From positions 248,001 to 312,000 of the IMG/VR virus record IMGVR_UViG_3300046517_002304: DNA of 64,000 nt. One strand, 5' to 3'. This document shows positions 12,592-26,722 of the stretch, one piece after another. Numbering within the stretch: the first letter of the stretch is position 1; each line of letters starts with the position of its first letter. Position numbers and translations under genes: made by a program. The notes under the pieces were generated by a model. The model was not told the origin of the DNA. It saw only the letters and a list, made by a program, of their open reading frames with translations, and ran no database searches.

Positions 12592-12593
12592 AA

Positions 12594-12791: not shown

Positions 12792-12801
12792 GCGGGGTAA
12801 T

Positions 12802-12949
12802 GGATAACTGCTCCCCGGCTAGTTATCCATATCTTAGGTACAGGGGAAACTATAAGAGTTAATAATTATAGTATCAGTACTTTAGCTATGGATAACTTAG
12901 AGGATCTCCGGGTAACGAAAACAGGGGGGACTTTCCCCCCTAGTTATCC
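12802..12949. repeat. Long intergenic element copy 1 (octamer pair + 77-bp IR-bounded unit + terminator)
   Basis: AGTTATCCATATCTTAGGTAC...TATGGATAACT then G6/C6 hairpin with A-tract. Confidence 0.8.
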
Positions 12950-12953
12950 CTGA

Positions 12954-13205
12954 TTAGTATTCGTCGAAGAATCCGTAGTCTTCGTCGGTCCCCATTCCGG
13001 CGCTGGTCATGGCCGAATCGTGGTCGCCATCCATATCTTCGCCGGGAATGTGGTCGTCGTCGGTCTGCTCTTCGTCTTCCAGAATTCCGACAGAGAGGAA
13101 CAGGCCAGTGGCAGCGTATGCCCGTACCAGCTTGACCGCTTCCTCTTCCGTGGCGACAACGTGCTCATGGCTGGCATTTTGCGTGCGACAGACGACAACT
13201 GGCAT
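12954..13205 (-). CDS. Hypothetical protein with acidic DGDHDSAMTSAG.GTDEDYG tail
   Basis: SD ACAGGAG before MPVVV. Confidence 0.7.
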   Translation of the reverse strand: MPVVVCRTQNASHEHVVATEEEAVKLVRAYAATGLFLSVGILEDEEQTDDDHIPGEDMDGDHDSAMTSAGMGTDEDYGFFDEY

Positions 13206-13254
13206 AGTCCTGTCTCCTGTAAGGGGGGTGCTGAATATAACAGGAGATGGATAA

Positions 13255-13467
13255 CTACGATTTGGCGAAACCGGCTCCGAGCGTCGTTTCAAATTCCCCG
13301 GCGGTCTTGCGGGTTTCGTGGTCCCAGATATAGCCGTAATCCATGTTCGGGCGATTCTGGAATTCGGCGAGGATACGACGGGCCTGTTCCATGCTTTCGG
13401 CGGGCAGAAACGAGATTGACGGCTTGCCCGGCGAAATTTTGCGATGGCCCACGACGGTGAGTTTCAT
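13255..13467 (-). CDS. Hypothetical protein
   Basis: Stop in octamer; AAGGA SD. Confidence 0.7.
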   Translation of the reverse strand: MKLTVVGHRKISPGKPSISFLPAESMEQARRILAEFQNRPNMDYGYIWDHETRKTAGEFETTLGAGFAKS

Positions 13468-13519
13468 AATTCGTTATCCTTTCAAAAATCGGGTGAAACT
13501 TACAACCGACTACGGATAA

Positions 13520-13717
13520 CTAACGGCTAATGCTCCCCGCGAGAAATCGCGTAAAGGGGTTGTGTGTCGTTTGCTGGATTTCTTCGAGGTCGGCCTTTGT
13601 TTCAGCGGCGATTCCCGATATGCGGGCATTGTCGGCGGCTGACATTTGATTTTTGTATCGGCGGGCGATTGACGTTACCTGAGTCAATGCCCGCAAGAGG
13701 TCAATCTGATCCCTCAT
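13520..13717 (-). CDS. Hypothetical protein
   Basis: ATGA-coupled; stop in octamer. Confidence 0.65.
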   Translation of the reverse strand: MRDQIDLLRALTQVTSIARRYKNQMSAADNARISGIAAETKADLEEIQQTTHNPFTRFLAGSISR

Positions 13718-14047
13718 TCTTGCATCGCTGCGATTGCAGCGGCCTTTCTAGTTCTCTGCCTACGCGGGCGGGTATCGTGAACGTGATGAGCGGTGCGGGT
13801 TTGATGACCGATAGCTACGTCAAGGTAGCCGATTTTTACGATCATCTTACGGGTTGACTTCTGTGCGGGGGTGTGCATAATTTCTAACGGATAACTAAGA
13901 CAGTCCGCACATTTTGCGGCTAAAGGAATTATCACGTTTAGGTGGCCTGAAGGAGAGCCAGGCATTCACGGCAACCCCGCGTGGGATTGGTTAACCCCAT
14001 GAATTGTTGTCCTATTATTCCCGACCCGTTTGCCGGTGCGGATTGTC

Positions 14048-14212
14048 TTAGGCGTCAACTTTCTTGATGTAATTGGATTCGAGATAAGCGTTTTTCATGG
14101 CATCCGTGTGGCCGTTGTCCCAGTGAATGATACACTCACCGTTGAGTTCATGCACCACGGTGCCCTTGAGGCCCTTCTCGTTTTGGAGGCGGTCACCCTT
14201 TTTTACATCCAT
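14048..14212 (-). CDS. Small SH3/KOW-like hypothetical protein
   Basis: SD ACAGGAG; GD....GTV...IHWDNG, similar to neighbour. Confidence 0.6.
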   Translation of the reverse strand: MDVKKGDRLQNEKGLKGTVVHELNGECIIHWDNGHTDAMKNAYLESNYIKKVDA

Positions 14213-14249
14213 TGTATACTCCTGTAAGAGACAAGAGTTAAAGGATAAC

Positions 14250-14459
14250 TCAGGCGGCACGCAATTCTTCAGCAACGCAGCCCTCTTCGTCGCCGTTATC
14301 CCATTGGACAGCGTAAATGCCGATGAAATTTCCCGGCACTCTGGCTACAATTTCGCCCCGCTTTGTTCCGTAATAATCCGTTACCCGTTGGCCGACTTCA
14401 AAAACGTATTGCATATTTGCTCCGAGGGTGCTGGTCGTAGCGAGACGTTTACGCCCCAT
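14250..14459 (-). CDS. Small SH3/KOW-like hypothetical protein
   Basis: FEVGQRV...GEIV...VQWDNG; stop in octamer. Confidence 0.6.
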   Translation of the reverse strand: MGRKRLATTSTLGANMQYVFEVGQRVTDYYGTKRGEIVARVPGNFIGIYAVQWDNGDEEGCVAEELRAA

Positions 14460-14687
14460 CTACTTTAATTCCCCCCACGTTGGAGTCCAGCGTTGCAGCG
14501 CTTACCCAATGGCGGGAGAAACTACAATCAGCGTTCCTAGGGATTACCCAGAAAAGTGAGAACATAGTAAACGAACGCGAAGAATCCGAAAATCAAGCTG
14601 CCGAATACGCCGCAGAAAACGGCCATTTCGGCGAATGGGACAATCCACTTGTCAACGAAGCGGTCCATCATGCCCCTCAAAGGATAA

Positions 14688-15071
14688 CTAACTGACGGTG
14701 TTGACGGTGATCGTCTTACGTCGCTTGCCGTTGAACGGGAGCAAGGTCACGAGAAATTCGTTGTGCCGCACGCCGCGAATGGAGTCAATAAAACCGCGAT
14801 GCTTGTTGTAGTAGAAGAGCCCGCCCTCAGACAGCTTTGCCATGAGCTGGCCGTTTGTCAGATTGCCGGGGGTCGGTTTGTTGCCGTCGTCGTTAATCAG
14901 CTTGACGATTTTCGGGATGACATCGTTATCCAAAAGACATGCTGAATCGCAGCGACTTTCAACGTCTGTCGGGTAGTTACAAACAATGTCCAGACTTTCG
15001 CCATACCGCCCGCCGATTTCAGTAAGGCGGATAATGCGATTGTCGTTAGTGATTTGGTTGTCGGCTCTCAT
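14688..15071 (-). CDS. Hypothetical protein
   Basis: Octamer-bounded ORF. Confidence 0.7.
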   Translation of the reverse strand: MRADNQITNDNRIIRLTEIGGRYGESLDIVCNYPTDVESRCDSACLLDNDVIPKIVKLINDDGNKPTPGNLTNGQLMAKLSEGGLFYYNKHRGFIDSIRGVRHNEFLVTLLPFNGKRRKTITVNTVS

Positions 15072-15105
15072 AATCGTTGTACCCTTTCAGGAACTAACGG
15101 ATAAC

Positions 15106-15345
15106 TTAGACCGCTTCCCCCCGACCGATCAGCCAATACCTATACTGGCCGTTCCGATATTCAATGACTGCGGAGCGGTCAATGTGGCTGGCATGGGTGA
15201 ACGCATGGTCGCGGCAATCGGCGAAACTGAAATCGGCAAGGCTTGGATTGACGACGAAGTAGTCAACGGCGATTGATTTGGGAGGAGCTGGCTTTGGCGG
15301 CGGGGACCATGAGCGGCGGTAGCCGTAATCGGTATATGGGTTCAT
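15106..15345 (-). CDS. Hypothetical protein
   Basis: ATG 10 nt after octamer; stop in octamer. Confidence 0.7.
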   Translation of the reverse strand: MNPYTDYGYRRSWSPPPKPAPPKSIAVDYFVVNPSLADFSFADCRDHAFTHASHIDRSAVIEYRNGQYRYWLIGRGEAV

Positions 15346-15355
15346 GGTTGTTAAT

Positions 15356-15510
15356 GGATAACTGCGGGGTGGGCTAGTTATCCATATCTTAGGTACGGGG
15401 AGAGTTTTGTTGTACTAGGATTTAACTAGTAGGTACCTAAGATATGGATAACTCTGGCGGTACGTGGCGAAAAGAAAAAACGCTCCCGTTTCGGGGAGCG
15501 TTAGTTATCC
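15356..15510. repeat. Long intergenic element copy 2 (perfect 21-bp IR, 15376-15396 / 15433-15453)
   Basis: AGTTATCCATATCTTAGGTAC and exact reverse complement; terminator at 15475-15502. Confidence 0.85.
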
Positions 15511-15521
15511 TTAGCTTTGGT

Positions 15522-15890
15522 CTATCGCAGATACTCGGGACCGTATTCGTTCATCCGTCCCATGCCCTTGCTGACGTCGTAGATGTTTCCTCTGGCGTGC
15601 TTCGCGGGGGCTTTCCACGTTGCGGGTTTCAGAATGTCGCCGTTGGCCTTGACGATGAAAGCGAAAGCTGAACCCCTGCAATCTCTGGCCCGTTCGCTGG
15701 CCCGCGATTTCCAGATGCGGACGTATTTGTTGCCGGGATCTTGGATCAACTCCTCCCGCTCCAGGGTCGGGAAGTGAGCCGCCATGTATTCATCAATTTT
15801 CTTCTGGTTATCCGCAACCCATTCCGTCAGTCGCTTCTGAAAGGTCGCGGCCTGTTCGTCGGCATGTCGCTGCAATTCGGCGGCATCCAT
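15522..15890 (-). CDS. Phage hypothetical protein (GDILKPATWKAPAKHARGNI motif)
   Basis: SD CAGGAG; motif familiar from T4-like phage hypotheticals. Confidence 0.75.
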   Translation of the reverse strand: MDAAELQRHADEQAATFQKRLTEWVADNQKKIDEYMAAHFPTLEREELIQDPGNKYVRIWKSRASERARDCRGSAFAFIVKANGDILKPATWKAPAKHARGNIYDVSKGMGRMNEYGPEYLR

Positions 15891-16320
15891 TGTATACTCC
15901 TGAGTAAGGTTGACAATGGGGAATGGATAACTAGCTGACCCGCACCAAGGCCCCACCGTTGCGAATGTCATGCCACGCGAAGCGAATGCCGTGCCGATCC
16001 AAAAATTCGGCGAAGCGAATTGCTCCCAGCGGGTGATTGAACAGGAACGAACGACCGATCCGACGAAAGCTAAGTTTATCCATCTGAGTTATCCTCTTGA
16101 GGAAAATGGACTCACTCTGGATTACGGATAACTAAACGTGCGGCATGTCGTGTGGAGTCAGTATTGCCCACCGGGCTAGGTGGTCCCGCTCCCAGTCTAT
16201 ACGCCGAACGCCTAGTTATAAAAACGAATGGATAACTAAGCAAGTGAGGACGCCAAAATCGTTTTGTCCCTTTCGGAAGATTGCCGATCTGGCTATGTCT
16301 CTTGCCTAGTTATCCGTAGC

Positions 16321-16518
16321 TTAGTTCTGGCGATACTTCGCAATCGCCGAGGCCATCGCGTCGTCAACGGTGCTGCCAGCGGCTACTGCTTCGCGGGTTT
16401 CGCTGAAGATTTTGCTGAGGTCAAACATCATCACCTCAACGCCGTTCCCAAGGCGGCTGTAGGCGTTGTCAATGCTGTCGTCCAACTGCTTTTCGGCTTT
16501 CGTCCTACGTTTCGCCAC
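16321..16518 (-). CDS. Hypothetical protein
   Basis: GTG start with ACAGGAG SD. Confidence 0.65.
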   Translation of the reverse strand: MAKRRTKAEKQLDDSIDNAYSRLGNGVEVMMFDLSKIFSETREAVAAGSTVDDAMASAIAKYRQN

Positions 16519-16561
16519 GATACTCTCCTGTAAGGGGTGACTGATGAGAGTTAAAGGATAA

Positions 16562-16849
16562 CTAGCCGACAGTGAACAGCGGTCGGGTGTATTCCGCCAT
16601 GACCGCCTTATCACTCTGGCGAACGATACGGGCAGCGGAAACTGTCGTCGGGCCGAGATGTTTGTTGCCGCCGGTGCGAGTTGATTCCTCAAAAGCAGCG
16701 ACGTATTTCCGCAAGTTATCCGCAGTCGGTTGACCGTCGCCAGGGACTTGCTCTTGCGGCGATTTTCGCAGTCGCCATTCGCAAGGCGTGTAGATGAAGC
16801 CGGGAACCTTAATCTCAACCGTGAAAGGAATCGCTCTTGATCGTCCCAT
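16562..16849 (-). CDS. Hypothetical protein
   Basis: SD ACAGGAG; stop in octamer. Confidence 0.75.
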   Translation of the reverse strand: MGRSRAIPFTVEIKVPGFIYTPCEWRLRKSPQEQVPGDGQPTADNLRKYVAAFEESTRTGGNKHLGPTTVSAARIVRQSDKAVMAEYTRPLFTVG

Positions 16850-16884
16850 GATAATCTCCTGTTAAGACAGGGAGAAATGGATAA

Positions 16885-17094
16885 CTATTCGCTGATTGTT
16901 TGCGTGTAGGGGATTTCCCCTAATGATTGGAGAATTTCCTCCGCAAGCACATTGCCGGCGTCAGCTCTGAGTTTCAACCCGCCGGCGATCAAGGCAAGTT
17001 TTCCGAGCGACAGGCCAGTAATTTCGTAAAGGTCGTACGCTCCCTTGATTAGTCCCTTAGTTTTCGTCAGTCCTAGCTTTTGCCCTTTCTTCAT
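16885..17094 (-). CDS. Hypothetical protein
   Basis: SD ACAGGAG; stop in octamer. Confidence 0.7.
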   Translation of the reverse strand: MKKGQKLGLTKTKGLIKGAYDLYEITGLSLGKLALIAGGLKLRADAGNVLAEEILQSLGEIPYTQTISE

Positions 17095-17271
17095 GGTATC
17101 TCCTGTGAGAGAAAATTATAAGACTGCCCGTGTTTTCGTCCGCGACAGCACCGCAATGCCGCCAACTGCCTCACCGACCGTTGCCGGGTAATCCGTGGTC
17201 TAGAACACACGACGTTCTACTTCCACGGGCCAGGTTTAGGAGCCTGTTGTCTTACGGTCGGATATGGATAA

Positions 17272-17463
17272 CTAGATGATCGGCATTGAAACCGTGCTGC
17301 CCTTGATTTCCGTGTCAACGATCTTGATATGATTGTTCGGACAATCCAAAGTGAAATTGTAGTCACAATCGGTCGCTGCCATATCGCCCGCGACTTCAGG
17401 TGAAAATACGTGCGGGTGTTCAATGTCAACCGCGACGACAAAGTAAACGCGGGATTTCAGCAT
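17272..17463 (-). CDS. Hypothetical protein
   Basis: SD AAGGAG; stop in octamer. Confidence 0.7.
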   Translation of the reverse strand: MLKSRVYFVVAVDIEHPHVFSPEVAGDMAATDCDYNFTLDCPNNHIKIVDTEIKGSTVSMPII

Positions 17464-17472
17464 GACGCTCCT

Positions 17473-17850
17473 TTATTCGTTTGAGTAACTCAAATCGTCG
17501 CTTGGCTGAAGTTGATTCCAGATATGCCCGCAATTTTCGCATGATTCACCATGCAACGCGGACTCAGGAATCGGCTCTTGACAGTCGGGACATTCGCCCT
17601 TATCATATTCGTTTCGGACGAGATCAGACGGAACCCAAGTCAGACGTTTGGGGAATGGTTTTTTATCACGGAAGCAAAGGATTCGTAAATCGCCCGATGC
17701 CTGACTTTTTGCAGAGGCAAGCGTAGGTGCCCAGTCCTGCCGATTAGTCCCGACTTTGTAACTCCAAAATGGAACAATGCCAGGCGTAGCAATCGGTTGC
17801 TGCCAGATTGTGCATTCGTAGTTCAGGTGTTTGGCGGTATACTGGAGCAT
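17473..17850 (-). CDS. Protein with C-terminal CxxC-CxxC zinc ribbon
   Basis: CPDC...CENC; ATG 10 nt after octamer. Confidence 0.7.
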   Translation of the reverse strand: MLQYTAKHLNYECTIWQQPIATPGIVPFWSYKVGTNRQDWAPTLASAKSQASGDLRILCFRDKKPFPKRLTWVPSDLVRNEYDKGECPDCQEPIPESALHGESCENCGHIWNQLQPSDDLSYSNE

Positions 17851-17860
17851 ACGATTTAAT

Positions 17861-18003
17861 GGATAACTCATCGCCGCCTAGTTATCCATATCTTAGGTAC
17901 GCAGAGAGTTTTGTTGTACTAGGATTTAACTAGTAGGTACTCTAGCTATGGATAACTAGACCTATCAGCTAGGCCAAAAAAATTGGCCCGGGTTTTCCGG
18001 GCC
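17861..18003. repeat. Long intergenic element copy 3
   Basis: 78-bp unit 17880-17957 near-identical to 15376-15453; terminator hairpin follows. Confidence 0.85.
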
Positions 18004-18282
18004 TTGTCCTATTCACCTTGCAGGTTATCCCCCTGATAAGCGGCGTAGCTCTTCTCATCGTGCCAAGTCAGCTTGACCGCACGGCAGGTCGTGAAATCGT
18101 GGTTCCAGAAAAAATCGTAATAGCGGGGGGTGAGATTTCGGTGTTCCCCGCGAGCAAATTGCTCCGCAGTGAATTCAATCATACCGGTTATCCTTTTAAT
18201 CGGGTGAAACTTACAACCGATTACGGATAACTAGAATGACCCTCCCTAGGTATCACTAGGGAGGGTCGGAGGGACGAACGCA

Positions 18283-18753
18283 TCAGGCAGCGGACTTGTC
18301 GGTCTTCTTCTTCGCGGGTTTCTTCGCAGCGACGGCTTTCGTCTTCGCGGCACGCGGCTTGCGGGGTTTGGCGGGTTTCGGGGTTTCGGCGACAGGTGCC
18401 GGCGGTTCAGGGGCGAGCGGTTCAACGGTCGGGGCGTCGTCCACCACAACGGCAGGCTTTCGCTTGCGTTGACGCGGGGCGGTCGGAAGGGCGACGGATT
18501 CGCCAACGGTCGGGATGATCTTTTCGCAGTCCAGTTGCACGCGGACACAATCGGTATCGTGATAGACTTCCAGCACCTTGCACTGAATGCCCATCCAGAC
18601 AGCGGCGGCCAGGCGGAAGAGATTCAGTCGGCCCTTATGGTCGCGGGACAACTCAACGCCGGTGATCGTGGTATCCTTTCGGTCACGAAACTTCAACTGC
18701 GGTTCTACCACCACTTCGCGGGGCTTTTCCTGTTCCTCAACTTCCATACGCAT
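18283..18753 (-). CDS. Protein with Pro/Lys/Ala-rich histone-like tail
   Basis: KPAKPRKPRAAKTKAVAAKKPAKKK. Confidence 0.7.
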   Translation of the reverse strand: MRMEVEEQEKPREVVVEPQLKFRDRKDTTITGVELSRDHKGRLNLFRLAAAVWMGIQCKVLEVYHDTDCVRVQLDCEKIIPTVGESVALPTAPRQRKRKPAVVVDDAPTVEPLAPEPPAPVAETPKPAKPRKPRAAKTKAVAAKKPAKKKTDKSAA

Positions 18754-18933
18754 CGCATACTCCTTAGAGAAGGGGGATTGTTGATTGTTAAGGGATAACT
18801 AACGCCAGTTAGGTGCCACTTCGGTCAACTGGACTACCTCGCACTCTATAGGACTTCGCGGGTGCATGGACGGTCGCAGGCGATTTCAACAGGCCCGCGT
18901 GCGTCTCGGTTAGTTACAACAATGAATGGATAA

Positions 18934-19122
18934 CTAGAAGCTGGATTTTCGTTCGTCCTGAGGCTTCGGCGGCATCGTCAGGCCATCCTGAAAAATCGCC
19001 CGACTTCGCAGCCATTGCAGCATTCCCTTCCAGCGTTCGGGGGGGATATGGTCGGGGCAACCGAAATCGTATCTGGTACATACCAGAAACGAATCAAGGT
19101 TCATTTTGCTGCAATCAATCAT
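18934..19122 (-). CDS. Hypothetical protein
   Basis: Octamer-bounded ORF. Confidence 0.55.
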   Translation of the reverse strand: MIDCSKMNLDSFLVCTRYDFGCPDHIPPERWKGMLQWLRSRAIFQDGLTMPPKPQDERKSSF

Positions 19123-19173
19123 AATACTATCAAACGGATAACTTAGTTGTTAGCTAGTTATCCGTAGCTTGTG

Positions 19174-19404
19174 TCAGTTGCCGTAAGCAAGGCCCATAGC
19201 AATCAACTCTTCGGCCACGCGCCGGGAAATCCGCAGCGCTCCGACATTGCCATTACGAACAATCGTGAGCTGAGGCCGACAACCATGAAACAAGTTGATA
19301 GTTGGCCGATGATCCGCTTTGGGAAGATTTCGGACTTTGCCGTCAATGCTGCCCTTCGGGAGCAACTCAGCAGCAGAGAAATCGGGGAGTTTACTTTTCG
19401 ACAT
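19174..19404 (-). CDS. Hypothetical protein
   Basis: ORF in co-directional cluster. Confidence 0.65.
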   Translation of the reverse strand: MSKSKLPDFSAAELLPKGSIDGKVRNLPKADHRPTINLFHGCRPQLTIVRNGNVGALRISRRVAEELIAMGLAYGN

Positions 19405-19413
19405 TTTGACCTT

Positions 19414-19698
19414 TCATTCGTAAGATGGAATCTCTTCGTCAATCAGATAATTGCGGCAAAGTTTCAAGGCGTCAATCGCGTTGTCCCGTTCGTTTCGCCA
19501 GAATTTGAGGACTTGCCGCTTGGCATTCTCTGCCGTCAAAAACCAGTAGCCAGTGCCGGCACCCTCTGCATGAGCTATCTGGCCGTTGTCAAAAACTACA
19601 ATCTCTTGATCGTCGTCAATGAGAATGTCTTTATAACAGAGGCCGATGGCACAGCAGTTTTGTTCAACCCATCCGTATACTCGGACTTGCTTGCTCAT
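19414..19698 (-). CDS. Hypothetical protein
   Basis: Follows octamer pair. Confidence 0.7.
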   Translation of the reverse strand: MSKQVRVYGWVEQNCCAIGLCYKDILIDDDQEIVVFDNGQIAHAEGAGTGYWFLTAENAKRQVLKFWRNERDNAIDALKLCRNYLIDEEIPSYE

Positions 19699-19749
19699 AA
19701 TGATTGCTAATGGATAACTAGTTGCCCGCTAGTTATCCATAGCTAGGTT

Positions 19750-19971: not shown

Positions 19972-19994
19972 TGTGAGTTATCCTTTACTAAAAT

Positions 19995-20068
19995 TGGGGA
20001 TGCTAGGACTCGAACCTAGGACCAAAAAATTATGAGTTTTCTGCTCTGACCAACTGAGCTACACCCCC
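19995..20068 (-). tRNA. tRNA with CAT anticodon (elongator Met or Ile2)
   Basis: Cloverleaf: GGGGGTG/CATCCCC acceptor, CTCATAA loop, GGTTCGAGTCC T-arm; CCA not encoded. Confidence 0.9.
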
Positions 20069-20074
20069 GGTGAT

Positions 20075-20533
20075 TTACGCCGCTCCCGCGACCTTACCCC
20101 GACACTCGGGACCGAAACCTGATTCAATACTCTCGGGAACCGTCAACGTCTTGAGGCAACGCCCGCACCTGCCAGCGTTATGCAACTTGAAACCAGCCGC
20201 CTCAATCGCAGCCGTATCGCCCGCCCATACGCGAGCCAGCACGCGATTAATCAATTTGAACGTCATTGAATCCTTTGTGAATTTTGACAGCTTCGTAATC
20301 GTGACTTCGCCGGTGAAAGCATTGACCTTGCCTACGTCGCTGTAATCCCGTATATTTTCGGGACCAGTCAACTTGCCGACCCACCAAGCCTCCGGAAATT
20401 CTGCCGTTGCTTCCGAATAGTTCACGCGATACGTATAATGAGGCTTGCAGCCGTGTTTCGCCGCGAATTCAGCGGGCAACTCAAGAGTAAAAATTGCCTT
20501 GCCAGCGAGGACGAATTCTTTTGTAATCATCAT
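20075..20533 (-). CDS. DUF6011-like zinc-binding protein
   Basis: CGRC..TLTVPESIESGFGPEC. Confidence 0.7.
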   Translation of the reverse strand: MMITKEFVLAGKAIFTLELPAEFAAKHGCKPHYTYRVNYSEATAEFPEAWWVGKLTGPENIRDYSDVGKVNAFTGEVTITKLSKFTKDSMTFKLINRVLARVWAGDTAAIEAAGFKLHNAGRCGRCLKTLTVPESIESGFGPECRGKVAGAA

Positions 20534-20634
20534 ACACTCCTGTTTTATAATTGACAGAAGGGTAGGGATAACTAAAAGACTCTACGCGGCAGTAGTTCCC
20601 ATGGGCGGGCCTTACCGCGTCAGAGTCCAAAACA

Positions 20635-21027
20635 TCACGCAACCGACGACGACCGCAACCGAGCGACTTCGTTGACGTAGGCAGCGGCTTCCGTATCAAC
20701 CGAAAGATACTCCAGAATTTTCTTGTTGACGATGAACGGAGCAACTCCGACGAATTCCCCGACGTATCCCCGAATCGCCGTGCTATACTTTCCGCAGAGC
20801 GAAAGGGCAACGTGATTGAAGGGGGAAACCTTGCGGTTGAGGATGACTTCATCATCCGACCGCCCGCCGAATCCCAAGGCGCGGGCCTCATTCGCCCGAT
20901 TCTGTTTGTCCTTCAGCAAGTCCAGACGAACCTGAGCCATTGCGACATTCGCCGCTGCCTTTGACTGCTGTTTGGCCGACTTCGGCTGAGTCATGCGAAT
21001 ATGAAGCGTCTTTTCGGTCTTCGCCAT
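20635..21027 (-). CDS. Hypothetical protein
   Basis: SD ACAGGAG. Confidence 0.75.
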   Translation of the reverse strand: MAKTEKTLHIRMTQPKSAKQQSKAAANVAMAQVRLDLLKDKQNRANEARALGFGGRSDDEVILNRKVSPFNHVALSLCGKYSTAIRGYVGEFVGVAPFIVNKKILEYLSVDTEAAAYVNEVARLRSSSVA

Positions 21028-21097
21028 AACTTCTACTCCTGTTTAAGAATTGCCTTGACGAATGAGAATGGATAACTACACTAGCGAAAGTTATCCA

Positions 21098-21334
21098 CTA
21101 TTTCGGCGGTCCCTGATTTTTTACTTCGTCCTGCCACGTTGCTTGCTGCCATTCGTGGCTGAAATCTTCGCAAGCCGCTTCCATCTCGGTGATGACTTCG
21201 CGGCAGGCATCGGTCACACTTACGGCAGCGGCACTATCACGATACCGCTCTTGAATCAATTTTCCCAAAGCACGGCGGGTCACATTGCCGCGATTAAATC
21301 TGAGAATGAGAGCCTCAAGAAATTCATCCATCAT
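21098..21334 (-). CDS. Hypothetical protein
   Basis: ATGA-coupled. Confidence 0.65.
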   Translation of the reverse strand: MMDEFLEALILRFNRGNVTRRALGKLIQERYRDSAAAVSVTDACREVITEMEAACEDFSHEWQQATWQDEVKNQGPPK

Positions 21335-21618
21335 ACCCCCTCTACGGATAACTCAGGTTTTTTGAATTTTACCAACTCGGGAAACAACTCAGTCGCTTGT
21401 GTCGGTTGGCCGAATTTGACCGCTCGTAAAATTGCTCTTGACGGCGGGCCAGTCCATCGCCTCCAATGTGATTTGTCGATACGGTTTAACTCAACCGCCC
21501 GTACCCATTGCCCGCCGATCTTAACCGCTCCATCGTATGAACCGACAAAGCTATAATAATTGGCGTCAGAATTCCGTATGCTTCTGGAAATCGTCTTGCC
21601 TAGGTCGTAGTTGGGCAT
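21331..21618 (-). CDS. Hypothetical protein
   Basis: ATG 10 nt after octamer. Confidence 0.65.
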   Translation of the reverse strand: MPNYDLGKTISRSIRNSDANYYSFVGSYDGAVKIGGQWVRAVELNRIDKSHWRRWTGPPSRAILRAVKFGQPTQATELFPELVKFKKPELSVEGV

Positions 21619-21635
21619 GGAGTTTAAGGGATAAC

Positions 21636-22217
21636 TCAGTGTCTCTTTGCCTTGGCACGAAGATAGGCGTCTTCCCACGCATACGCCTCTTCTGCCGTGA
21701 CCGTGCCGCCGATTGCATTGAACATTGCATTCAGCTTGCGATTGTATTCAGCAGCATGCCGACGAACAACGGCAGGATTTGCCTCACCGTCGCAATGCAG
21801 AGTCTCGGGTTCAAGTGCCGCATAGCAAGCAACGATTGCCGCCATGATAGCCTTATCAATATTGGATTGCAGAATCGGATGGAAAACCGAATTTGCTGGT
21901 TGAACGCGACCGACCCCGAGCAACTTCATTGCGTCAACCGTCGCAACGTCAGCGGCGGTCAGCGTCACCTTTTCGCGGGGAGTTTCGGTCTTCTGCGAAG
22001 TAACCCGAGCAACGTCTGCCTCTGTTGCGGGAGTAAGCATTTCATAAGGGACAACCCAAATTGACCCTACTTCGCTGCCACGCCCGTACCCGCGTTGCTC
22101 CAATATGCGAACTTTCGCTTTGACGCGGTTACGCTTGAAAATTTTAGCGATAGTCCTTTGACCATTTTCGCGGCCAAAGCTCACCGGCATTCCGTCGTAT
22201 GCTTGTTCGTAATTCAT
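21636..22217 (-). CDS. Hypothetical protein (LEPETLHCDGE motif)
   Basis: ATG 10 nt after octamer; stop in octamer. Confidence 0.75.
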   Translation of the reverse strand: MNYEQAYDGMPVSFGRENGQRTIAKIFKRNRVKAKVRILEQRGYGRGSEVGSIWVVPYEMLTPATEADVARVTSQKTETPREKVTLTAADVATVDAMKLLGVGRVQPANSVFHPILQSNIDKAIMAAIVACYAALEPETLHCDGEANPAVVRRHAAEYNRKLNAMFNAIGGTVTAEEAYAWEDAYLRAKAKRH

Positions 22218-22227
22218 ATTTGCCAAT

Positions 22228-22368
22228 GGATAACTCATCGCCGCCTAGTTATCCATATCTTAGGTACGTAGCAGATATTGTTGTACTAGGATTTTCTAAT
22301 GTTGTACTCTAGTTATGGATAACTGGCCAGGACTACAGGCCAAAAAATTAGCCCCCGTTTAGCCGGGG
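22228..22368. repeat. Long intergenic element copy 4
   Basis: First ~40 bp identical to copy 3; 78-bp unit 22247-22324; terminator. Confidence 0.85.
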
Positions 22369-22600
22369 GAACGCTGACGCTCATTAGCCGCGAGCGACGA
22401 CAGCAAGGTGTAAGGGATAACTCAGTCAAACAAATCCCGCTTTGCCTGATAGCCGTCATCTTCCGGCCCCCAGGTATTTTCGCAGTTGCCGTGTTCGTCA
22501 ATGTAACGAATCACGCCAGTAAGGTCAAGCTGAAGACAACCGCCGTCTTCCATTTCCAACTCTTGCATAATCAGGACTCCTTTAATTGTTAAGGGATAAC

Positions 22601-22789
22601 TCAGACGGGAACGTGAATGAATTCAATCGTTACGTGCTGGCGGGCAAATCTTCGGGCTTCCTCAATCGCCTCTAGTAAGTTATGATTAGAAGCGATTCCA
22701 AGCATTACGCCCCCTTCGTCGCGGGGAGCATTGCCGAAAATGTCATACCCTCTATAATCATTCGCTTGCACGTAAATCGCCGTAATCAT
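22601..22789 (-). CDS. Hypothetical protein
   Basis: Coupled; stop in octamer. Confidence 0.65.
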   Translation of the reverse strand: MITAIYVQANDYRGYDIFGNAPRDEGGVMLGIASNHNLLEAIEEARRFARQHVTIEFIHVPV

Positions 22790-23451
22790 TTTTCACCACC
22801 TACAAGAGACAGCAGCAATTCGGCGACGGCATTGTTTGTGAAGCGGGTAAGTTTCAAGTCCCTGATCGTGTTGACTCGGGGCTGGCAGTATTCGGCGAAC
22901 GCGGCGGAAATTTCCACAAGCTGATGATTGACTTCAACCAGATTCAACAGGTCGCGGTCAATCGCCTTGATGTATTCCTCTTTCTCGGTGAGTTGCTTCA
23001 CCACTTCAGCAAAAATGCCGTTGTAGCTTCGCCAATCGGGATTGTCCCAATCCTTAGACAAGTAGGTAGAAAGCCTATCGTCGCAACCGATGACCGCCTC
23101 ACGCAAGTAATACTGAGGACCGTCGCCCTTGCTTCGCTCAATCTGTTTGAGCATTTTATTCGACAGCAATTCGGCGGGATAGTAAACTTCACCGCCCCAA
23201 ATTTTGACGCGGACGTTGTAGTTCTCATTCTCCAGAATGACGCTCCACCCCTTGGCGAATGGGTTGTCTGATTTCGCCAAATCGGCCTTGAATTCGCGGA
23301 CCAGCACGTTATCCACACGAACACGATGCTTGATACGGTTCAGGGTGCCGATGAGAATCCCGAGGAGGAAACTTTCAACCTCTGCCACGAGGCGAGCACG
23401 GCGAAGATTCTTTTCGGCTGCAATCGTTTGCGGGAGCGGTGCGAATTCCAT
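22786..23451 (-). CDS. Hypothetical protein
   Basis: SD CAGGAG; 221 aa. Confidence 0.8.
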   Translation of the reverse strand: MEFAPLPQTIAAEKNLRRARLVAEVESFLLGILIGTLNRIKHRVRVDNVLVREFKADLAKSDNPFAKGWSVILENENYNVRVKIWGGEVYYPAELLSNKMLKQIERSKGDGPQYYLREAVIGCDDRLSTYLSKDWDNPDWRSYNGIFAEVVKQLTEKEEYIKAIDRDLLNLVEVNHQLVEISAAFAEYCQPRVNTIRDLKLTRFTNNAVAELLLSLVGGEK

Positions 23452-23491
23452 GGGATACTCCTGAGTAATGTTGACGAAAGTTAAAGGATAA

Positions 23492-23776
23492 CTATTCGCT
23501 CACGTAGACTTTGCCGTGAGCGATGTAGTCCAGTGCCGTCGCCCAATCGCATCGCGGCTCTTCGCAAATGATCGTTGTCTTGCCGTCAAACGTGACCCCG
23601 ACAGAAATCAGTCTATCAGGATTTGTCGGAAGGGCCAGCAGAGTAATATTACGCTGCCGCCACTTGTTGACGGTGGCTCCGATGAGCGGAAGCTGTACGA
23701 TTTCTTCCATGCTCAACGTGGTATTGTTATGAATCTGCATAACGGCCTGATTGTTTGTTTTCATAATGAGCATCAA
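23492..23776 (-). CDS. Hypothetical protein
   Basis: Octamer-bounded ORF. Confidence 0.65.
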   Translation of the reverse strand: MMLIMKTNNQAVMQIHNNTTLSMEEIVQLPLIGATVNKWRQRNITLLALPTNPDRLISVGVTFDGKTTIICEEPRCDWATALDYIAHGKVYVSE

Positions 23777-23872
23777 GGGATAACTGAAAAATTGGCGGGC
23801 CAGCTTGCGTTCAGTATTATCGGGCGTTCCCTAACCTACTAGCAAGCCGTTCCCCGCCGTGAGATCAGTAAT

Positions 23873-23976
23873 GGATAACTAGCTGGCCTCATAGTTATCC
23901 ATATCTTAGGTACAGAGCAATTTTTAATTCTTATAATGAAATAAAAAAACGCCAGCGGGTGATTCCCGCCAGCGTT
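23873..23976. repeat. Long intergenic element copy 5 (single arm) plus terminator
   Basis: GGATAACT-12 nt-AGTTATCCATATCTTAGGTAC. Confidence 0.75.
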
Positions 23977-24197
23977 ATCAAATTCTAGCCCTCAAGGTTC
24001 TAACCTATCTAAACAAACCCCGATGTATAGTATGGCAGGCCGCTCTGCCGGCGCGACGGCACTAGGGAGAATGATGATTGATCTATGCTACATAGTAGGC
24101 TCCGGGCTAGTGGAGCAAAGCATAGCAAAATCAGCAGTGGAAGAAAAATAAACATAATGATTCCGAGGTTTTTGGCAGTTGCACACTATACTAAAGC

Positions 24198-24677
24198 ATG
24201 CAAAAGTTTAACTGCGGGACTTGTGGAAAAGAAGTTTATCGACCGACTTGGAGAATCAAAAAATGTTTAACTGGCATTTTTTACTGTAGCCAGAAATGTT
24301 GCTGTGATGCTAATAACAAAAAAAAGGCGGATCAGGTTAGTGGTATGAGAAAAGGCGAAGTACTAAACCACTGTTCCACGTCCAGTAGGTTCGCAACGAT
24401 ACGGAAAAATGCTAGGCGAACATACCTTGCGTCAGACAAACCTAAGTGCTGCCTAGTATGCGGGTATTCTAAGCATATTGAAATTTGCCATGTTCAGGGG
24501 ATTACAACATTCCCCGATGAGACGAAGTTAATCGTTATCAACGATCTGACAAATCTCGTTGCTTTATGTCCGACCCATCATTGGGAGTTAGACAATAAGC
24601 AGCTTGACGAAGAAATACTCCCGGAAAGATTCGCACTTTCGACCCCCGGGTTAGAAACCCGATGCTCTATCTGCTGA
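24198..24677 (+). CDS. HNH endonuclease with N-terminal Cys-rich zinc finger
   Basis: CLVC...EICHV...NLVALCPTHH; antisense to surrounding genes. Confidence 0.8.
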   Translation: MQKFNCGTCGKEVYRPTWRIKKCLTGIFYCSQKCCCDANNKKKADQVSGMRKGEVLNHCSTSSRFATIRKNARRTYLASDKPKCCLVCGYSKHIEICHVQGITTFPDETKLIVINDLTNLVALCPTHHWELDNKQLDEEILPERFALSTPGLETRCSIC

Positions 24678-24688
24678 GCTACGAGAGC
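24616..24688 (-). tRNA. tRNA-Arg(TCT)
   Basis: Cloverleaf: GCTCTCG/CGGGAGT acceptor, TTTCTAA loop; atypical T-loop TGCGAAT. Confidence 0.85.
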
Positions 24689-24744
24689 AACTGACAGACA
24701 ACAATGGATAACTCAGGAGTTCCTGAGTTATCCTTACCTGAAAT

Positions 24745-24957
24745 TCAAGCGACAACTTTTCCGTGTCTGATCCAGTCCAGTTCGCCACCGAAACACGATA
24801 CGGATGAACCGTCAGGAAAAGCCACTAAGTAATGAGCACGATTTGACATCATTTTCTTGCTCTTCACGCGACCAACCTTGTTGGTTCGCTCATAGAGCAC
24901 CGGGTCACCGACATTATGCTCGGGAACGAATTCCGCACGATAGCCAACAGACTTCAT
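24745..24957 (-). CDS. Hypothetical protein
   Basis: SD ACAGGAG before MKSVGY. Confidence 0.65.
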   Translation of the reverse strand: MKSVGYRAEFVPEHNVGDPVLYERTNKVGRVKSKKMMSNRAHYLVAFPDGSSVSCFGGELDWIRHGKVVA

Positions 24958-25006
24958 AATCGTTGCTCCTGTAGAGTTGTGGACTTGATGCCTGTTAAGG
25001 GATAAC

Positions 25007-25297
25007 TCAGGATTCGGTGGAATGAACAATCAGGATATAGCTCTGACTCTCTTCCGGCGATGAACCAGCAACGTAAAATTGCCCGTCCATCAGGCAGTCC
25101 TCAAATTCGTCGGGAGTCATCACGTTTTCAATGCCGGGGGACGATTCTTTCGCCCACTTCAGGAATAGCTCTTCCGCTTGGCTATTCCCATCCTTATCGT
25201 CGGGGAAGGATGCCAGCTTGTCTACAACTGACTTATCGCTCACCCAAATCACGTTGACGGTTTTAAGCACGGCAATTACTCCAAAAGAAAAGACCAC
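25007..25297 (-). CDS. Hypothetical protein
   Basis: Stop in octamer. Confidence 0.6.
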   Translation of the reverse strand: MVFSFGVIAVLKTVNVIWVSDKSVVDKLASFPDDKDGNSQAEELFLKWAKESSPGIENVMTPDEFEDCLMDGQFYVAGSSPEESQSYILIVHSTES

Positions 25298-25394
25298 CCG
25301 CCACTCCCTGTAAACTCACAATGAGCACCTGAGGGTTTAGGCAGAATGGGTCGTATTATATGGACCGCTTAGCATGCAAGGTTAAGGGATAACT

Positions 25395-25677
25395 GTGTCC
25401 GCTGGTTTTATCTCTTGCTTTCATCGCAACGGGGATACGTTATCCAATAGCGTTGCAGTCATTACGACAAGCCTATTATCCAACTGTCATCACAATTTAG
25501 CAAGGCTCCAACCTTGGATTTAGCCATCGGCACCTACGACGATGGACTTACAGGACTCCAACTGCCTCTAGATTTCACCCGCTCCGCGAGAGCTATTCGG
25601 ATTCACTGGCTCTAGACGCCCAATGTTAAAGCCGCTTCATCGCATTGCGATACCTCACGACTTCAACACTGTATCAT
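25395..25677 (-). ncRNA. Candidate structured ncRNA
   Basis: Octamer-bounded, no long ORF, several complementary helices. Confidence 0.4.
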
Positions 25678-25878
25678 GGATAACTACTTGCGCTTCCGGC
25701 GACCGACGTTCAACAGCGTGCGGTCCTCAAATCCGAGTTTCACGCCATGAACGCGACACACCTGAGCCACCGCTTGAATGAGCTGACGGCCCTGTTCCGA
25801 TTTTGTCGGCTTGCAACTTTTCGCCATGACTCTATTCTCCAGAATGGAAATTGATTTGTCTGATTGACAATGGATAAC

Positions 25879-26148
25879 TCAGCCGCGATTGTCCTCTTGC
25901 CCCTCAACCAACATTGCGGGGACAGTGATGCGACCAGTCAGCATGCCCATCATCGCCCGCCGTGGTGCCGCATAGGTTTCGTAATCAATGCTCAACGCTG
26001 GCGTAGCGACTACCAGATCGGTGCGAGTGACGTAGAAGTATTTCGGGTATTTCAGAGGATTGAAATTGAAGAACGTCTGAAATTGTTCAAGCGTGCGGCT
26101 GGCGTTGCGGTAAACGTAGCCAGAGGCTCTGAGTACTTCAGGATTCAT
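25879..26148 (-). CDS. Hypothetical protein
   Basis: AAGGA SD; stop in octamer. Confidence 0.7.
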   Translation of the reverse strand: MNPEVLRASGYVYRNASRTLEQFQTFFNFNPLKYPKYFYVTRTDLVVATPALSIDYETYAAPRRAMMGMLTGRITVPAMLVEGQEDNRG

Positions 26149-26178
26149 AATCGGTTCCTTTAATTACTAAAGGATAAC

Positions 26179-26442
26179 TCAGCCGCGAAGATACAGCCGT
26201 TCACCCTTCACGATGACGTAGCAACTGCCGGCGTTGCTGTAGCAGATACAGTAAACGCGATACAGCTTCGTATCGCCGTTGAAGCGGAGCATTTTGTCAG
26301 TGCTGATTTTGCTACCGTAGCCGTCTTCCCCTTGCCCTGGGGCTAACTGAAGCATACCACGGCGAGGAACAGGCCGCTCAATCAACTCATAGTTGTCGGC
26401 GTATGTAATCGCCGGGCCACAAGATCCAGAGAGGATAGACAT
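26179..26442 (-). CDS. Phage hypothetical protein (GYG.KI.T...RVYCICYSNAGS motif)
   Basis: SD GGAG; stop in octamer. Confidence 0.75.
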   Translation of the reverse strand: MSILSGSCGPAITYADNYELIERPVPRRGMLQLAPGQGEDGYGSKISTDKMLRFNGDTKLYRVYCICYSNAGSCYVIVKGERLYLRG

Positions 26443-26525
26443 TGAATACTCCGGTGATTTGTAAGGGGGATTTACATCATGGCGACTGTCGAACCCGCCG
26501 CGATAACCCCCAGATGCAGGACGAT

Positions 26526-26722
26526 GGATAACTAGCTGCCCCCATAGTTATCCATAGCTAAGGTACGGACTATCATTTAGATTCCCCTGCTAGTTATCCA
26601 TAGCTAAGGTACGGAACAATACTAGGATGCCCCCGTTAGTTATCCATAGCTTAGGTCCGGCCGAACATAGCTGGGGCCAGTCGAAATAAAAAATGCCCCT
26701 CAGCCAATCAAGGCTGAGGGGA
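26526..26722. repeat. Three direct repeats TAGTTATCCATAGCT(A/T)AGGT at 46-bp period, plus terminator
   Basis: Octamers at 26546, 26592, 26638. Confidence 0.85.

What the first reader, a model, noticed from the sequence alone, without database searches (positions are those of the whole stretch)
12802..26553. Ten inverted pairs GGATAACT-N11/12-AGTTATCC (27-28 bp) confined to 12.8-26.6 kb
Seen: pairs start at 12802 (N11), 15356 (N12), 17861 (N11), 19136 (N12), 19712 (N11), 21070 (N11), 22228 (N11), 23873 (N12), 24706 (N12; perfect 13-bp arms) and 26526 (N12). Spacer sequence varies but length does not. Known: this geometry is typical of dimeric DNA-binding sites; Xer dif sites are 28 bp and loxP begins ATAACT and ends AGTTAT. 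Inference: the octamer is a protein half-site on dsDNA, with full sites concentrated at one end of the zone. No recombinase gene was recognised in this window.
Basis: partly seen in the sequence, partly recalled or inferred. Interest (0 to 1): 0.7.

Follow-up and report, generated by a model that had tools for sequence, protein, structure and literature searches.

The report
Back-to-back phage promoter motif pairs
The ten inverted pairs are real, but they are back-to-back copies of a 12-13 bp signal repeated 160 times in front of tiny genes in a 511 kb soil phage; this signal most likely acts as the phage's own promoter for leaderless mRNAs, not as a recombination site.

Summary
The ten pairs exist exactly as listed (chance expectation about 0.1). 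The octamer is not a half-site. It is the invariant core of an asymmetric motif, (T)AGTTATCC-N-T-W-A.

- **Copies and host genome:** 160 exact copies lie on the gene strand of one 150 kb zone. The genome is a complete 511 kb phage record.
- **Position:** the motif sits at gene junctions. The upstream stop codon overlaps its 5' edge. In 44 sites an ATG with no Shine-Dalgarno follows exactly 10 nt after CC.
- **Start-site signature:** elsewhere the same position shows a pyrimidine-purine step, followed by a short leader carrying a Shine-Dalgarno.
- **Context:** every strong terminator in the zone is followed by a copy. One copy precedes a tRNA and another a structured ORF-less RNA.
- **Second class:** late genes carry T4-like TAAATA-N4-ATG, and the genome encodes two sigma factors.
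- **Recombinases:** no tyrosine or serine recombinase and no Y1 transposase was found.

Best reading: a phage-specific promoter starting transcription 10 nt after CC.

In the pairs the gene-ward copy is an ordinary promoter. Its mirror copy lies at -30 to -38. In six pairs that mirror copy is a conserved 21 bp form, just downstream of a terminator. What the mirror copy does is unresolved. No RNA data exist.

The parts
12802..12828 (.). Pair 1 (N11). The forward copy is GGATAACT on the + strand, which reads AGTTATCC on the gene strand. It lies 10 nt before the ATG of ORF 12594-12791(-). The reverse copy is the 21-bp extended form, 12821-12841.
15356..15383 (.). Pair 2 (N12). The forward copy lies 10 nt before the ATG of ORF 15106-15345(-). 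The reverse copy is the extended form, 15376-15396.
17861..17887 (.). Pair 3 (N11). The forward copy lies 10 nt before the ATG at 17847 (zinc-ribbon ORF, 124 aa). The reverse copy is the extended form, 17880-17900.
19136..19163 (.). Pair 4 (N12). The forward copy lies 13 nt before the ATG of ORF 18934-19122(-). The reverse copy directly follows the stop of ORF 19174-19404(-). There is no terminator here.
19712..19738 (.). Pair 5 (N11). The forward copy lies 13 nt before the ATG of ORF 19414-19698(-). The reverse copy has 3 mismatches to the extension.
21070..21096 (.). Pair 6 (N11). The forward copy is followed by a 42-nt leader with CAGGAG before ORF 20635-21027(-). The reverse copy lacks T at +9.
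22228..22254 (.). Pair 7 (N11; its spacer is identical to that of pair 3). The forward copy lies 10 nt before the ATG of ORF 21636-22238(-). The reverse copy is the extended form, 22247-22267.
23873..23900 (.). Pair 8 (N12). The forward copy precedes a roughly 75-nt structured, ORF-less RNA with a terminator-like end (23785-23866, -). The reverse extended copy, 23893-23913, points toward the + strand HNH endonuclease ORF 24198-24677.
24706..24733 (.). Pair 9 (N12; perfect 13-bp arms). The forward copy ends 17 nt upstream of the 5' end of tRNA-Arg (24615-24689, -).
26526..26553 (.). Pair 10 (N12). The forward copy lies 83 nt before ORF 26179-26442(-). The reverse copy is the first of three tandem extended copies with a 46-bp period (26546, 26592, 26638).
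12877..12897 (-). Forward extended copy (c.ext), 61-62 bp face-to-face with the reverse extended copy of the pair. Equivalent copies lie at 15433-15453, 17937-17957 and 22304-22324.
12922..12942 (-). Gene-strand intrinsic terminator that heads the module. Equivalents lie at 15479-15502, 17985-18003, 22352-22369, 23948-23976 and 26696-26721. Terminators at 18238-18267 and 29554-29584 are each followed directly by a single forward copy.
11406..64000 (-). The window's part of the motif zone, which runs on to genome 410 kb. It holds tiny minus-strand genes in blocks of 1-5, each block headed by (T)AGTTATCC-N-T-W-A.
26802..28605 (-). UvrD-like helicase in two ORFs: the N part at 27640-28605 and the C part at 26802-27590. 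A motif copy at 27634-27641 sits in the 45-nt gap between them.

Best explanation
The octamer is the invariant core of a phage-specific promoter, (T)AGTTATCC-N-T-W-A. On this reading the motif occupies about -19 to -7, and transcription starts 10 nt after CC. Host RNA polymerase would be directed there by a phage factor. The 215-aa sigma with regions 2 and 4 is the obvious but unproven candidate. Where an ATG sits at that point the mRNA is leaderless. Elsewhere a short leader carries its own Shine-Dalgarno, or the product is a tRNA or small RNA. The zone is a hyperplastic block of ORFan mini-genes punctuated by these promoters. At its high-GC end, terminator-plus-promoter modules separate the transcription units. 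Each inverted pair is two promoter copies back to back. The gene-ward copy is an ordinary member of the array. The mirror copy lies at -30 to -38 of that promoter, and the two predicted start sites are about 48 bp apart. In six pairs the mirror copy is a conserved 21-bp form, AGTTATCCATAKCTWAGGTAC. It is inferred to fire away from the gene; in one case it points toward an HNH endonuclease gene. It may also serve as an upstream or regulatory element of the first promoter after a terminator. Shown here: the anatomy, the statistics and the gene content. Inferred: promoter activity, the start site, the identity of the factor, and what the mirror copy does.
For: Motif logo: 160 gene-strand copies, T at +9 in 159 of 160, and no information outside -2 to +11.

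Exactness: 160 exact copies against 5 one-mismatch copies, which is background.

Distance to the start codon: exactly 10 nt in 44 sites. All 44 are ATG and only 3 have a Shine-Dalgarno-like sequence. By contrast 38 of 53 sites with leaders over 15 nt have one, as do 69 of 219 internal coupled starts; background is 9%.

Start-site signature: a pyrimidine just before the ATG in 42 of 44 sites, against 49% of 159 Shine-Dalgarno-led ATGs (p = 2e-9). At the 78 sites with no ATG there, +17 is a pyrimidine in 71% and +18 a purine in 77% (p about 3e-5 and 2e-5).

Terminators: all eight gene-strand terminators with stems of 7 bp or more found in the zone are followed by a forward copy within 5-163 nt, against a background of 15.5%.

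Non-coding products: copies precede a tRNA (17 nt upstream) and an ORF-less structured RNA.

Internal control: late and structural genes elsewhere in the genome carry TAAATA-N4-ATG. There are 32 sites at N4 against 2-7 at other spacings, and 30 of 32 have a pyrimidine before the ATG. This matches the T4 late promoter TATAAATA at -13 to -6 (PMC1524935). The genome also encodes a gp55-like sigma (phrog_234).

A second sigma with regions 2 and 4 is encoded.

Precedent: a single-block promoter, TAATGTATA, is read by the phiEco32 phage sigma (PMC4331800).

Pairs: the forward copy of every pair behaves like the solitary copies, and six of ten pairs lie just downstream of a terminator.
Against: - No transcript data exist. 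No RNA run was listed, so neither promoter activity nor the start site has been observed.
- The motif resembles no known -10 or -35 consensus and has no -35 partner at 150 sites.
- No sigma or polymerase can be assigned to it.
- Reverse copies mostly face no coding gene. Plus-strand ORFs score as shadows, apart from the one HNH gene.
- The extended copies have G-T rather than pyrimidine-purine at +17/+18.
- Near-total invariance of 9 positions over 160 sites is tighter than most promoter sets.
- Upstream ORFs end exactly at the 5' edge in 80 of 115 cases. That would also fit a junction or coupling signal.
- The constant N11/12 spacer across at least six unrelated spacer sequences is unexplained by simple divergent promoters.
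- Gene calls are my own ORF heuristics.
Confidence: 0.5

Rival explanations
1. Operator sites of a phage DNA-binding regulator, in the manner of stoperators. A protein binds the asymmetric 12-13-mer at every gene junction, to silence or otherwise modulate transcription. At the ten pairs two protomers bind cooperatively two helical turns apart, giving high-affinity operators that control the first promoter of each insulated unit.
For: The sites are asymmetric, co-oriented with transcription and intergenic, and they overlap stop codons in 80 of 115 cases. This is how L5-type stoperators are described (PMC9283540). The pair geometry is constant, with centres 19-20 bp apart, despite unrelated spacers. 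The six pairs with extended copies sit at the heads of units, after terminators. ESAS inverted repeats in Cluster K phages are also suspected operators (PMC11373665).
Against: The fixed 10-nt distance to Shine-Dalgarno-less ATGs and the pyrimidine-purine signature at +17/+18 are not features of stoperators. After terminators no other conserved promoter candidate was found. No repressor, integrase or other sign of a temperate lifestyle was identified. The motif is absent from two-thirds of the genome.
Confidence: 0.2
2. An element that acts in the RNA. AGUUAUCC in the polycistronic transcript would be a processing or termination-reinitiation signal, comparable to Cluster K start-associated sequences. 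At the pairs the reverse copy pairs with it, forming an intercistronic hairpin that stabilises or processes the message.
For: The stop codon overlaps the 5' edge and the start lies at a fixed distance downstream. The pairs fold into 10-bp (once 13-bp) stems of -10.4 to -20.6 kcal/mol, with z-scores of -2.6 to -6.4. In four pairs the reverse arm directly follows the upstream stop codon. The exactness of the octamer would suit base pairing. SAS are proposed to act in translation (PMC3203893).
Against: Copies stand directly after strong terminators, where little read-through RNA is expected. They also stand before a tRNA and an ORF-less RNA, and 20-80 nt ahead of genes that have their own Shine-Dalgarno. 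No wobble variants occur. The motif does not pair with the usual anti-Shine-Dalgarno. Any inverted repeat folds, so the hairpin energies carry no independent weight.
Confidence: 0.15
3. Site-specific recombination or cassette-junction sites. The octamer would mark crossover points at which mini-gene cassettes are inserted, and the inverted pairs would be full or hairpin sites, in the manner of dif, lox or attC.
For: ORFs end exactly at TAG|TTATCC. GC3 falls stepwise from 0.60 to 0.36 away from the end that holds the pairs, as if cassettes were added there. The genes are ORFans. The octamer is exact. GTTATCC loosely recalls the integron core GTTRRRY; this rests on my own knowledge.
Against: No tyrosine or serine recombinase and no Y1 transposase is found in a complete genome. 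The 11-12 bp spacer and 8-10 bp arms fit neither dif, lox nor attC. About 150 junctions have no inverted partner. Six soil and rhizosphere samples show the same arrangement with no alternative joints; the only 'joints' were cross-matches between repeat copies. No related genome is available to show gain or loss.
Confidence: 0.06

Closest known systems
PeSL cassettes (promoter-early stem-loops) of T4-type phages (PMC2839356, PMC4122927)
   Same: Short terminator-plus-promoter composites repeated between small, mostly ORFan genes in a hyperplastic region. The phage also has T4-like late signals (TAAATA and a gp55-like sigma).
   Different: The PeSL promoter is sigma-70-like, whereas here it is an unrelated 12-13-mer with no -35. 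Most copies here lack the stem-loop. Inverted back-to-back copies are not a PeSL feature. PeSL-mediated shuffling could not be tested because no relatives were found.
SAS / ESAS of Cluster K mycobacteriophages (PMC3203893, PMC11373665)
   Same: A 13-bp asymmetric, near-identical repeat just upstream of start codons. It has one orientation and is restricted to the non-structural part of the genome. A subset carries an upstream inverted repeat with a spacer of about 12-14 bp. The function is still unproven.
   Different: SAS number 11-19 copies, contain a ribosome-binding-like GGAG and lie 3-9 bp from the start. Here there are 160 copies with no Shine-Dalgarno, 10 nt from the start. ESAS repeats are a different sequence from SAS and embed a SigA-like promoter. 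Here the inverted repeat is made of the motif itself.
Single-block promoters read by phage sigma factors: T4 late TATAAATA/gp55 (PMC1524935) and phiEco32 TAATGTATA (PMC4331800)
   Same: One short, highly conserved block close to the start site, with no -35. A phage-encoded sigma is present. The class is confined to one temporal or functional gene set.
   Different: The sequence is unrelated. The copy number is far higher. The cognate factor is unknown. Leaderless starts are the dominant arrangement.
Stoperators of Cluster A mycobacteriophages (PMC9283540)
   Same: An asymmetric 13-14-mer, many copies, co-oriented with transcription, in short intergenic gaps or over stop codons.
   Different: Stoperators have no fixed distance to start codons. 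They occur across the whole genome of temperate phages that have a known repressor.
dif / loxP tyrosine-recombinase core sites
   Same: Overall length of 27-28 bp, and inverted arms containing ATAACT...AGTTAT.
   Different: Those sites have 11-13 bp arms and a 6-8 bp centre, against 8-10 bp arms and an 11-12 bp centre here. There are ten copies plus about 150 solitary arms. No recombinase gene was found.

Membership tests
Tyrosine-recombinase core site (dif, loxP) | Two inverted 11-13 bp binding arms around a 6-8 bp crossover region | tested here: not met
   The arms are 8-10 bp and the spacer 11-12 bp in all ten pairs.
Tyrosine-recombinase core site (dif, loxP) | A cognate recombinase available | tested here: inconclusive
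   PF00589 and PF00239 are absent from the complete phage genome, and the controls rang. Host XerCD cannot be examined because the host is unknown.
Integron attC / cassette array | Every cassette boundary carries an imperfect inverted repeat (R''/L''...L'/R', 57-141 bp), and an IntI integrase is present | tested here: not met
   Only 10 of about 160 junctions have an inverted partner, the stem is 8-10 bp, and there is no integrase.
PeSL-type terminator-promoter cassette | A stem-loop terminator directly followed by a conserved promoter, repeated among small non-essential genes | tested here: met
   All eight strong gene-strand terminators found by the strict scan are followed by a forward copy within 5-163 nt, against a background of 15.5%. 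The genes are tiny ORFans.
PeSL-type terminator-promoter cassette | The promoter is a strong sigma-70-like early promoter | tested here: not met
   The motif has no TTGACA/TATAAT character and no -35 block.
PeSL-type terminator-promoter cassette | Indels between related phages begin and end at the cassettes | not testable with these tools
   No related genome with the motif was found in IMG/VR or in metagenome contigs.
SAS/ESAS (Cluster K) | A 13-bp asymmetric repeat 3-9 bp upstream of starts that includes a ribosome-binding-like core | tested here: not met
   The distance is 10 nt from CC and only 3 of 44 sites have a Shine-Dalgarno-like sequence. The sequence is unrelated to GGGATAGGAGCCC.
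SAS/ESAS (Cluster K) | One orientation, non-structural region only, and a subset with an upstream inverted repeat | tested here: met
Sigma-dependent phage promoter | A fixed position relative to the transcription start, with a pyrimidine(-1)/purine(+1) start | tested here: met
   This is indirect evidence. The ATG lies at +18 in 44 sites; 95% have a pyrimidine at +17; 71% have a pyrimidine at +17 and 77% a purine at +18 where there is no ATG.
Sigma-dependent phage promoter | Primary transcript 5' ends at the predicted site | not testable with these tools
   No RNA run was listed.
Sigma-dependent phage promoter | A cognate sigma or polymerase is encoded | tested here: inconclusive
   Two sigma-like genes are present. 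One is gp55-like and better matched to the TAAATA class. No assignment to this motif is possible. No T7-like polymerase or beta subunit was found.
Stoperator | Bound by an immunity repressor of a temperate phage | not testable with these tools
   No repressor or integrase was recognised.

The most novel reading that the evidence does not exclude
The zone is a growing cassette array built by an unrecognised site-specific mechanism. ORFan mini-genes would be joined exactly at TAG|TTATCC...T. The newest cassettes would lie at the 259 kb end, marked by GC3 of 0.60, their own Shine-Dalgarno leaders, terminators, inverted copies and an HNH endonuclease. The oldest, toward 410 kb, would have drifted to the backbone composition (GC3 about 0.35). 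On this view the exact motif serves both as junction and as promoter, and the inverted pairs and 21-bp forms are the active or most recent recombination substrates.
Probability: 0.1. Interest if true: 0.85.

Novelty: new variant of a known kind. Interest (0 to 1): 0.5.

Why it matters
If the motif is a promoter, this uncultured 511 kb phage runs roughly 30% of its genome from one exact 12-13 bp signal, and much of that output would be leaderless mRNA. A second, T4-late-like leaderless class serves the virion genes.

That gives a directly testable regulatory map for a megaphage with no cultured host. It also gives a compact orthogonal promoter candidate, and a handle on which sigma reads what.

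The graded GC3 and the terminator-promoter modules further suggest how huge phages accumulate ORFan genes.

Tried and rejected
- **Literature search for the octamer:** only primers, DnaA boxes and 16S rRNA turned up.
- **DnaA-box resemblance:** the box is TTATCCACA, but the invariant T at +9 replaces the box's C, and no DnaA domain IV was found in the genome.
- **REP/RAYT or IS200-like mobilisation:** no Y1 transposase and no target-site duplications.
- **Alternative genetic code:** the standard code gives 0.8-0.9 coverage by long ORFs outside the zone. The low coverage inside it reflects tiny genes.
- **Plus-strand coding downstream of reverse copies:** codon scores look like shadow frames and there are no Pfam hits, apart from the one HNH ORF.
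- **Repetition by gene duplication:** only a few small paralogue families exist, and the flanks of the motif carry no information.
- **Relatives carrying the motif:** the 21-mer gave 0 hits in IMG/VR and in metagenome contigs. Ten single pair-pattern hits in IMG/VR showed no enrichment and are chance. A helicase relative at 32% identity lacks the motif. The sigma and DNA polymerase queries found only the same phage.
- **DNA runs:** six soil or rhizosphere runs show the same sequence. The contig breaks and one 'joint' are cross-matches between repeat copies.
- **RNA runs:** none was listed.
- **Rfam:** only the tRNAs.
- **Other frequent k-mers** (TAATATTAGA, TAGCTATAAT): these come from a 60-bp coding tandem repeat, not from promoters.

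Full report
**Observation.** None appears in shuffled sequence. Random placement of the local copies predicts about 0.1 such pairs. The octamer is far more common than the finding implies. There are 133 copies in the window and 185 in the genome. Of these, 160 lie on one strand between genome 259 and 410 kb.

The window is bases 248,001-312,000 of a single-contig IMG/VR virus record. That record is 511,233 bp with terminal overlap and is rated complete. It has 39% GC, four tRNAs, no rRNA and a standard genetic code.

**Anatomy of the motif.** All genes of the zone are on the minus strand, and Pfam hits confirm that strand. Read on the gene strand the motif is (T)AGTTATCC-N-T-W-A:

- T at -1 in 131 of 160 copies.
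- T at +9 in 159 of 160.
- A or T at +10 in 144 of 160.
- No information outside -2 to +11.

It is essentially never degenerate. There are 160 exact octamers against 5 one-mismatch versions, which is background. The six copies outside the zone lack the flanking T and are chance.

The motif sits at gene junctions. In 80 of 115 cases the upstream ORF's stop codon (TAG, or TGA/TAA one base earlier) overlaps the 5' edge.

The downstream side falls into clear classes:

- In 44 sites an ATG lies exactly 10 nt after CC. All 44 are ATG and only 3 have a Shine-Dalgarno-like sequence.
- In 16 sites the ATG lies 13 nt after CC.
- In 53 sites there is a leader of more than 15 nt, and 38 of these carry a Shine-Dalgarno.

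For comparison, internal translationally coupled starts have a Shine-Dalgarno in 32% of cases, and background is 9%.

**Evidence for a transcription start 10 nt after CC.**

- The base before the ATG is a pyrimidine in 42 of 44 sites, against 49% of 159 Shine-Dalgarno-led ATGs in the same zone (p = 2e-9).
- At the 78 sites with no ATG at that position, +17 is a pyrimidine in 71% and +18 a purine in 77% (p about 3e-5 and 2e-5).
- The eight gene-strand intrinsic terminators with stems of 7 bp or more found by my strict scan of the zone are all followed by a forward copy within 5-163 nt, several as hairpin-TTTT-AGTTATCC. Two further terminators from the tool's scan of the window (23948-23976 and 18238-18267) are also followed by forward copies. 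The background expectation is 15.5%.
- One copy ends 17 nt upstream of tRNA-Arg.
- Another precedes a roughly 75-nt ORF-less RNA. It folds at -34.3 kcal/mol (z = -3.9) and ends in a hairpin plus a U-run.

These last two cases argue against a purely translational role.

**An internal control.** Outside the zone, TAAATA-N4-ATG occurs 32 times before ORFs of 60 codons or more, against 2-7 at any other spacing. A pyrimidine precedes the ATG in 30 of 32. The downstream genes include virion structural proteins, a tail sheath stabiliser and a protease. This is the T4 late promoter type, TATAAATA at -13 to -6, read by gp55 (PMC1524935). The genome also encodes a 156-aa protein with sigma region 2 only, matching the PHROG 'late sigma transcription factor'.

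So this phage demonstrably places a known promoter type at a fixed, leaderless distance from ATGs. The zone motif shows the same arrangement with a different sequence. A second sigma (215 aa, regions 2 and 4) is encoded at 457 kb. No T7-like polymerase or beta subunit was detected (the control for the T7-like search was silent). Single-block promoters read by phage sigmas have precedent, for example phiEco32 TAATGTATA (PMC4331800). Leaderless translation tolerates leaders of up to about 5 nt (PMC4007540). That also fits the 13-nt class.

**The pairs.** In each pair the copy on the gene side is an ordinary forward member of the array. It lies 10 or 13 nt from an ATG in seven pairs. In the other three it precedes a leader with a Shine-Dalgarno, the tRNA, or the small RNA.

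The partner is a reverse copy placed back to back. Its octamer occupies -30 to -38 of the forward promoter, and the two predicted start sites are about 48 bp apart.

Reverse copies exist almost only in the 15 kb at the high-GC end of the zone.

In six pairs (12802, 15356, 17861, 22228, 23873, 26526):

- The reverse copy is a conserved 21-bp form, AGTTATCCATAKCTWAGGTAC, with no mismatches.
- The pair lies just downstream of a strong terminator.
- In four of the six, a forward 21-bp copy faces the reverse one across 61-62 bp.
- At 26.5 kb three reverse 21-mers are tandem with a 46-bp period.

Spacer sequences differ among at least six pairs while the length stays 11-12. Length therefore seems constrained.

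The pairs can fold as RNA or DNA hairpins of -10 to -21 kcal/mol, as any inverted repeat would.

Plus-strand ORFs downstream of reverse copies look like shadow frames. The exception is an HNH endonuclease ORF (24198-24677) 285 nt beyond the reverse copy of pair 23873.

I therefore read the pairs as divergent promoter copies at the heads of insulated transcription units. The function of the mirror copy is unresolved. It could be an antisense or outward promoter, an upstream element, or an operator.

**Recombination reading.** The complete genome has no detectable tyrosine recombinase, serine recombinase or Y1 transposase. The geometry does not fit dif, lox or attC. About 150 junctions have only one arm. 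Contigs from six soil or rhizosphere samples show the same arrangement, and the breaks and the single 'joint' are cross-matches between repeat copies.

A cassette-accretion history is not excluded:

- GC3 falls 0.60, 0.56, 0.49, 0.46, 0.46 and then about 0.36 per 10 kb away from the end that holds the pairs, in parallel with motif density.
- The one protein searched, from the high-GC end, is an ORFan: it found only itself.
- ORFs end exactly at the motif edge.

**Comparison and novelty.** The system works most like PeSL terminator-promoter cassettes of T4-type phages (PMC2839356, PMC4122927). It looks most like the SAS/ESAS repeats of Cluster K mycobacteriophages (PMC3203893, PMC11373665). It differs from both in sequence, in scale (160 exact copies over 150 kb), in the leaderless geometry, and in building its inverted repeats from the motif itself.

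No related genome carrying the motif was found. I rate it a new variant of a known kind.

**Limits.** There are no transcript data. Gene calls come from my own ORF rules. The host is unknown, and no factor can be assigned to the motif.

Noticed in passing
genome-wide, outside the zone (for example window 2716-2729, upstream of ORF 2274-2726(-); loci L017-L026): A second promoter-like class, TAAATA-N4-ATG. It has 32 sites at N4 against 2-7 at other spacings and stands before virion and late genes. It is T4-late-like and is matched by a gp55-like sigma at genome 95.3-95.8 kb.
   Followed up: yes
window 11000-64000 (genome 259-310 kb): A stepwise GC3 gradient of 0.60, 0.56, 0.49, 0.46, 0.46, falling to the backbone value of about 0.35. 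It runs parallel to motif density and is unexplained. There is a sharp GC drop at window position about 11.0-11.4 kb.
   Followed up: partly
window 24198-24677 (+): An HNH endonuclease ORF on the opposite strand. Its GC is lower than its surroundings, and it overlaps the 3' part of tRNA-Arg on the other strand. It looks like a free-standing homing-type insertion.
   Followed up: partly
window 23785-23866 (-): A structured RNA candidate of about 75 nt with no ORF, lying between two motif copies and ending in a hairpin plus a U-run (-34.3 kcal/mol, z = -3.9). It has no Rfam family.
   Followed up: partly
window 26802-28605 (-): A UvrD/Rep-like helicase split into an N-terminal ORF (321 aa) and a C-terminal ORF (262 aa) at the 1A/2A boundary. 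A motif copy and a new Shine-Dalgarno and start sit in the 45-nt gap.
   Followed up: partly
window 4975-10829 (-): Thirteen tandem paralogous ORFs of about 90 aa with overlapping stops and starts. The GC is 0.34-0.36 and there are no motif copies. They lie directly downstream of the zone.
   Followed up: no
window 26546-26683 (+): Three tandem 46-bp units, each beginning with the 21-bp extended motif. They lie between a terminator and pair 10 and next to the helicase gene. The arrangement looks like iterons; an origin function was not tested.
   Followed up: no
window 3306-4139 (-) and nine other loci in the zone; window 34511-40987: A 10-member family with a weak DUF6745 match, and an 8-member family of proteins of about 100 aa. 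Members of the second family tend to be the last gene before a motif copy.
   Followed up: no
genome 130-133 kb (outside the window): A long coding region with 60-bp periodic repeats, inside a 2580-codon ORF headed by a TAAATA-N4-ATG site.
   Followed up: no
whole genome: GC skew is strongly negative from about 250 kb through the ends to about 40 kb, and near zero from 40 to 250 kb. The switch points lie next to the pair-bearing end of the zone and next to a family A DNA polymerase gene. Gene-strand bias confounds this.
   Followed up: no
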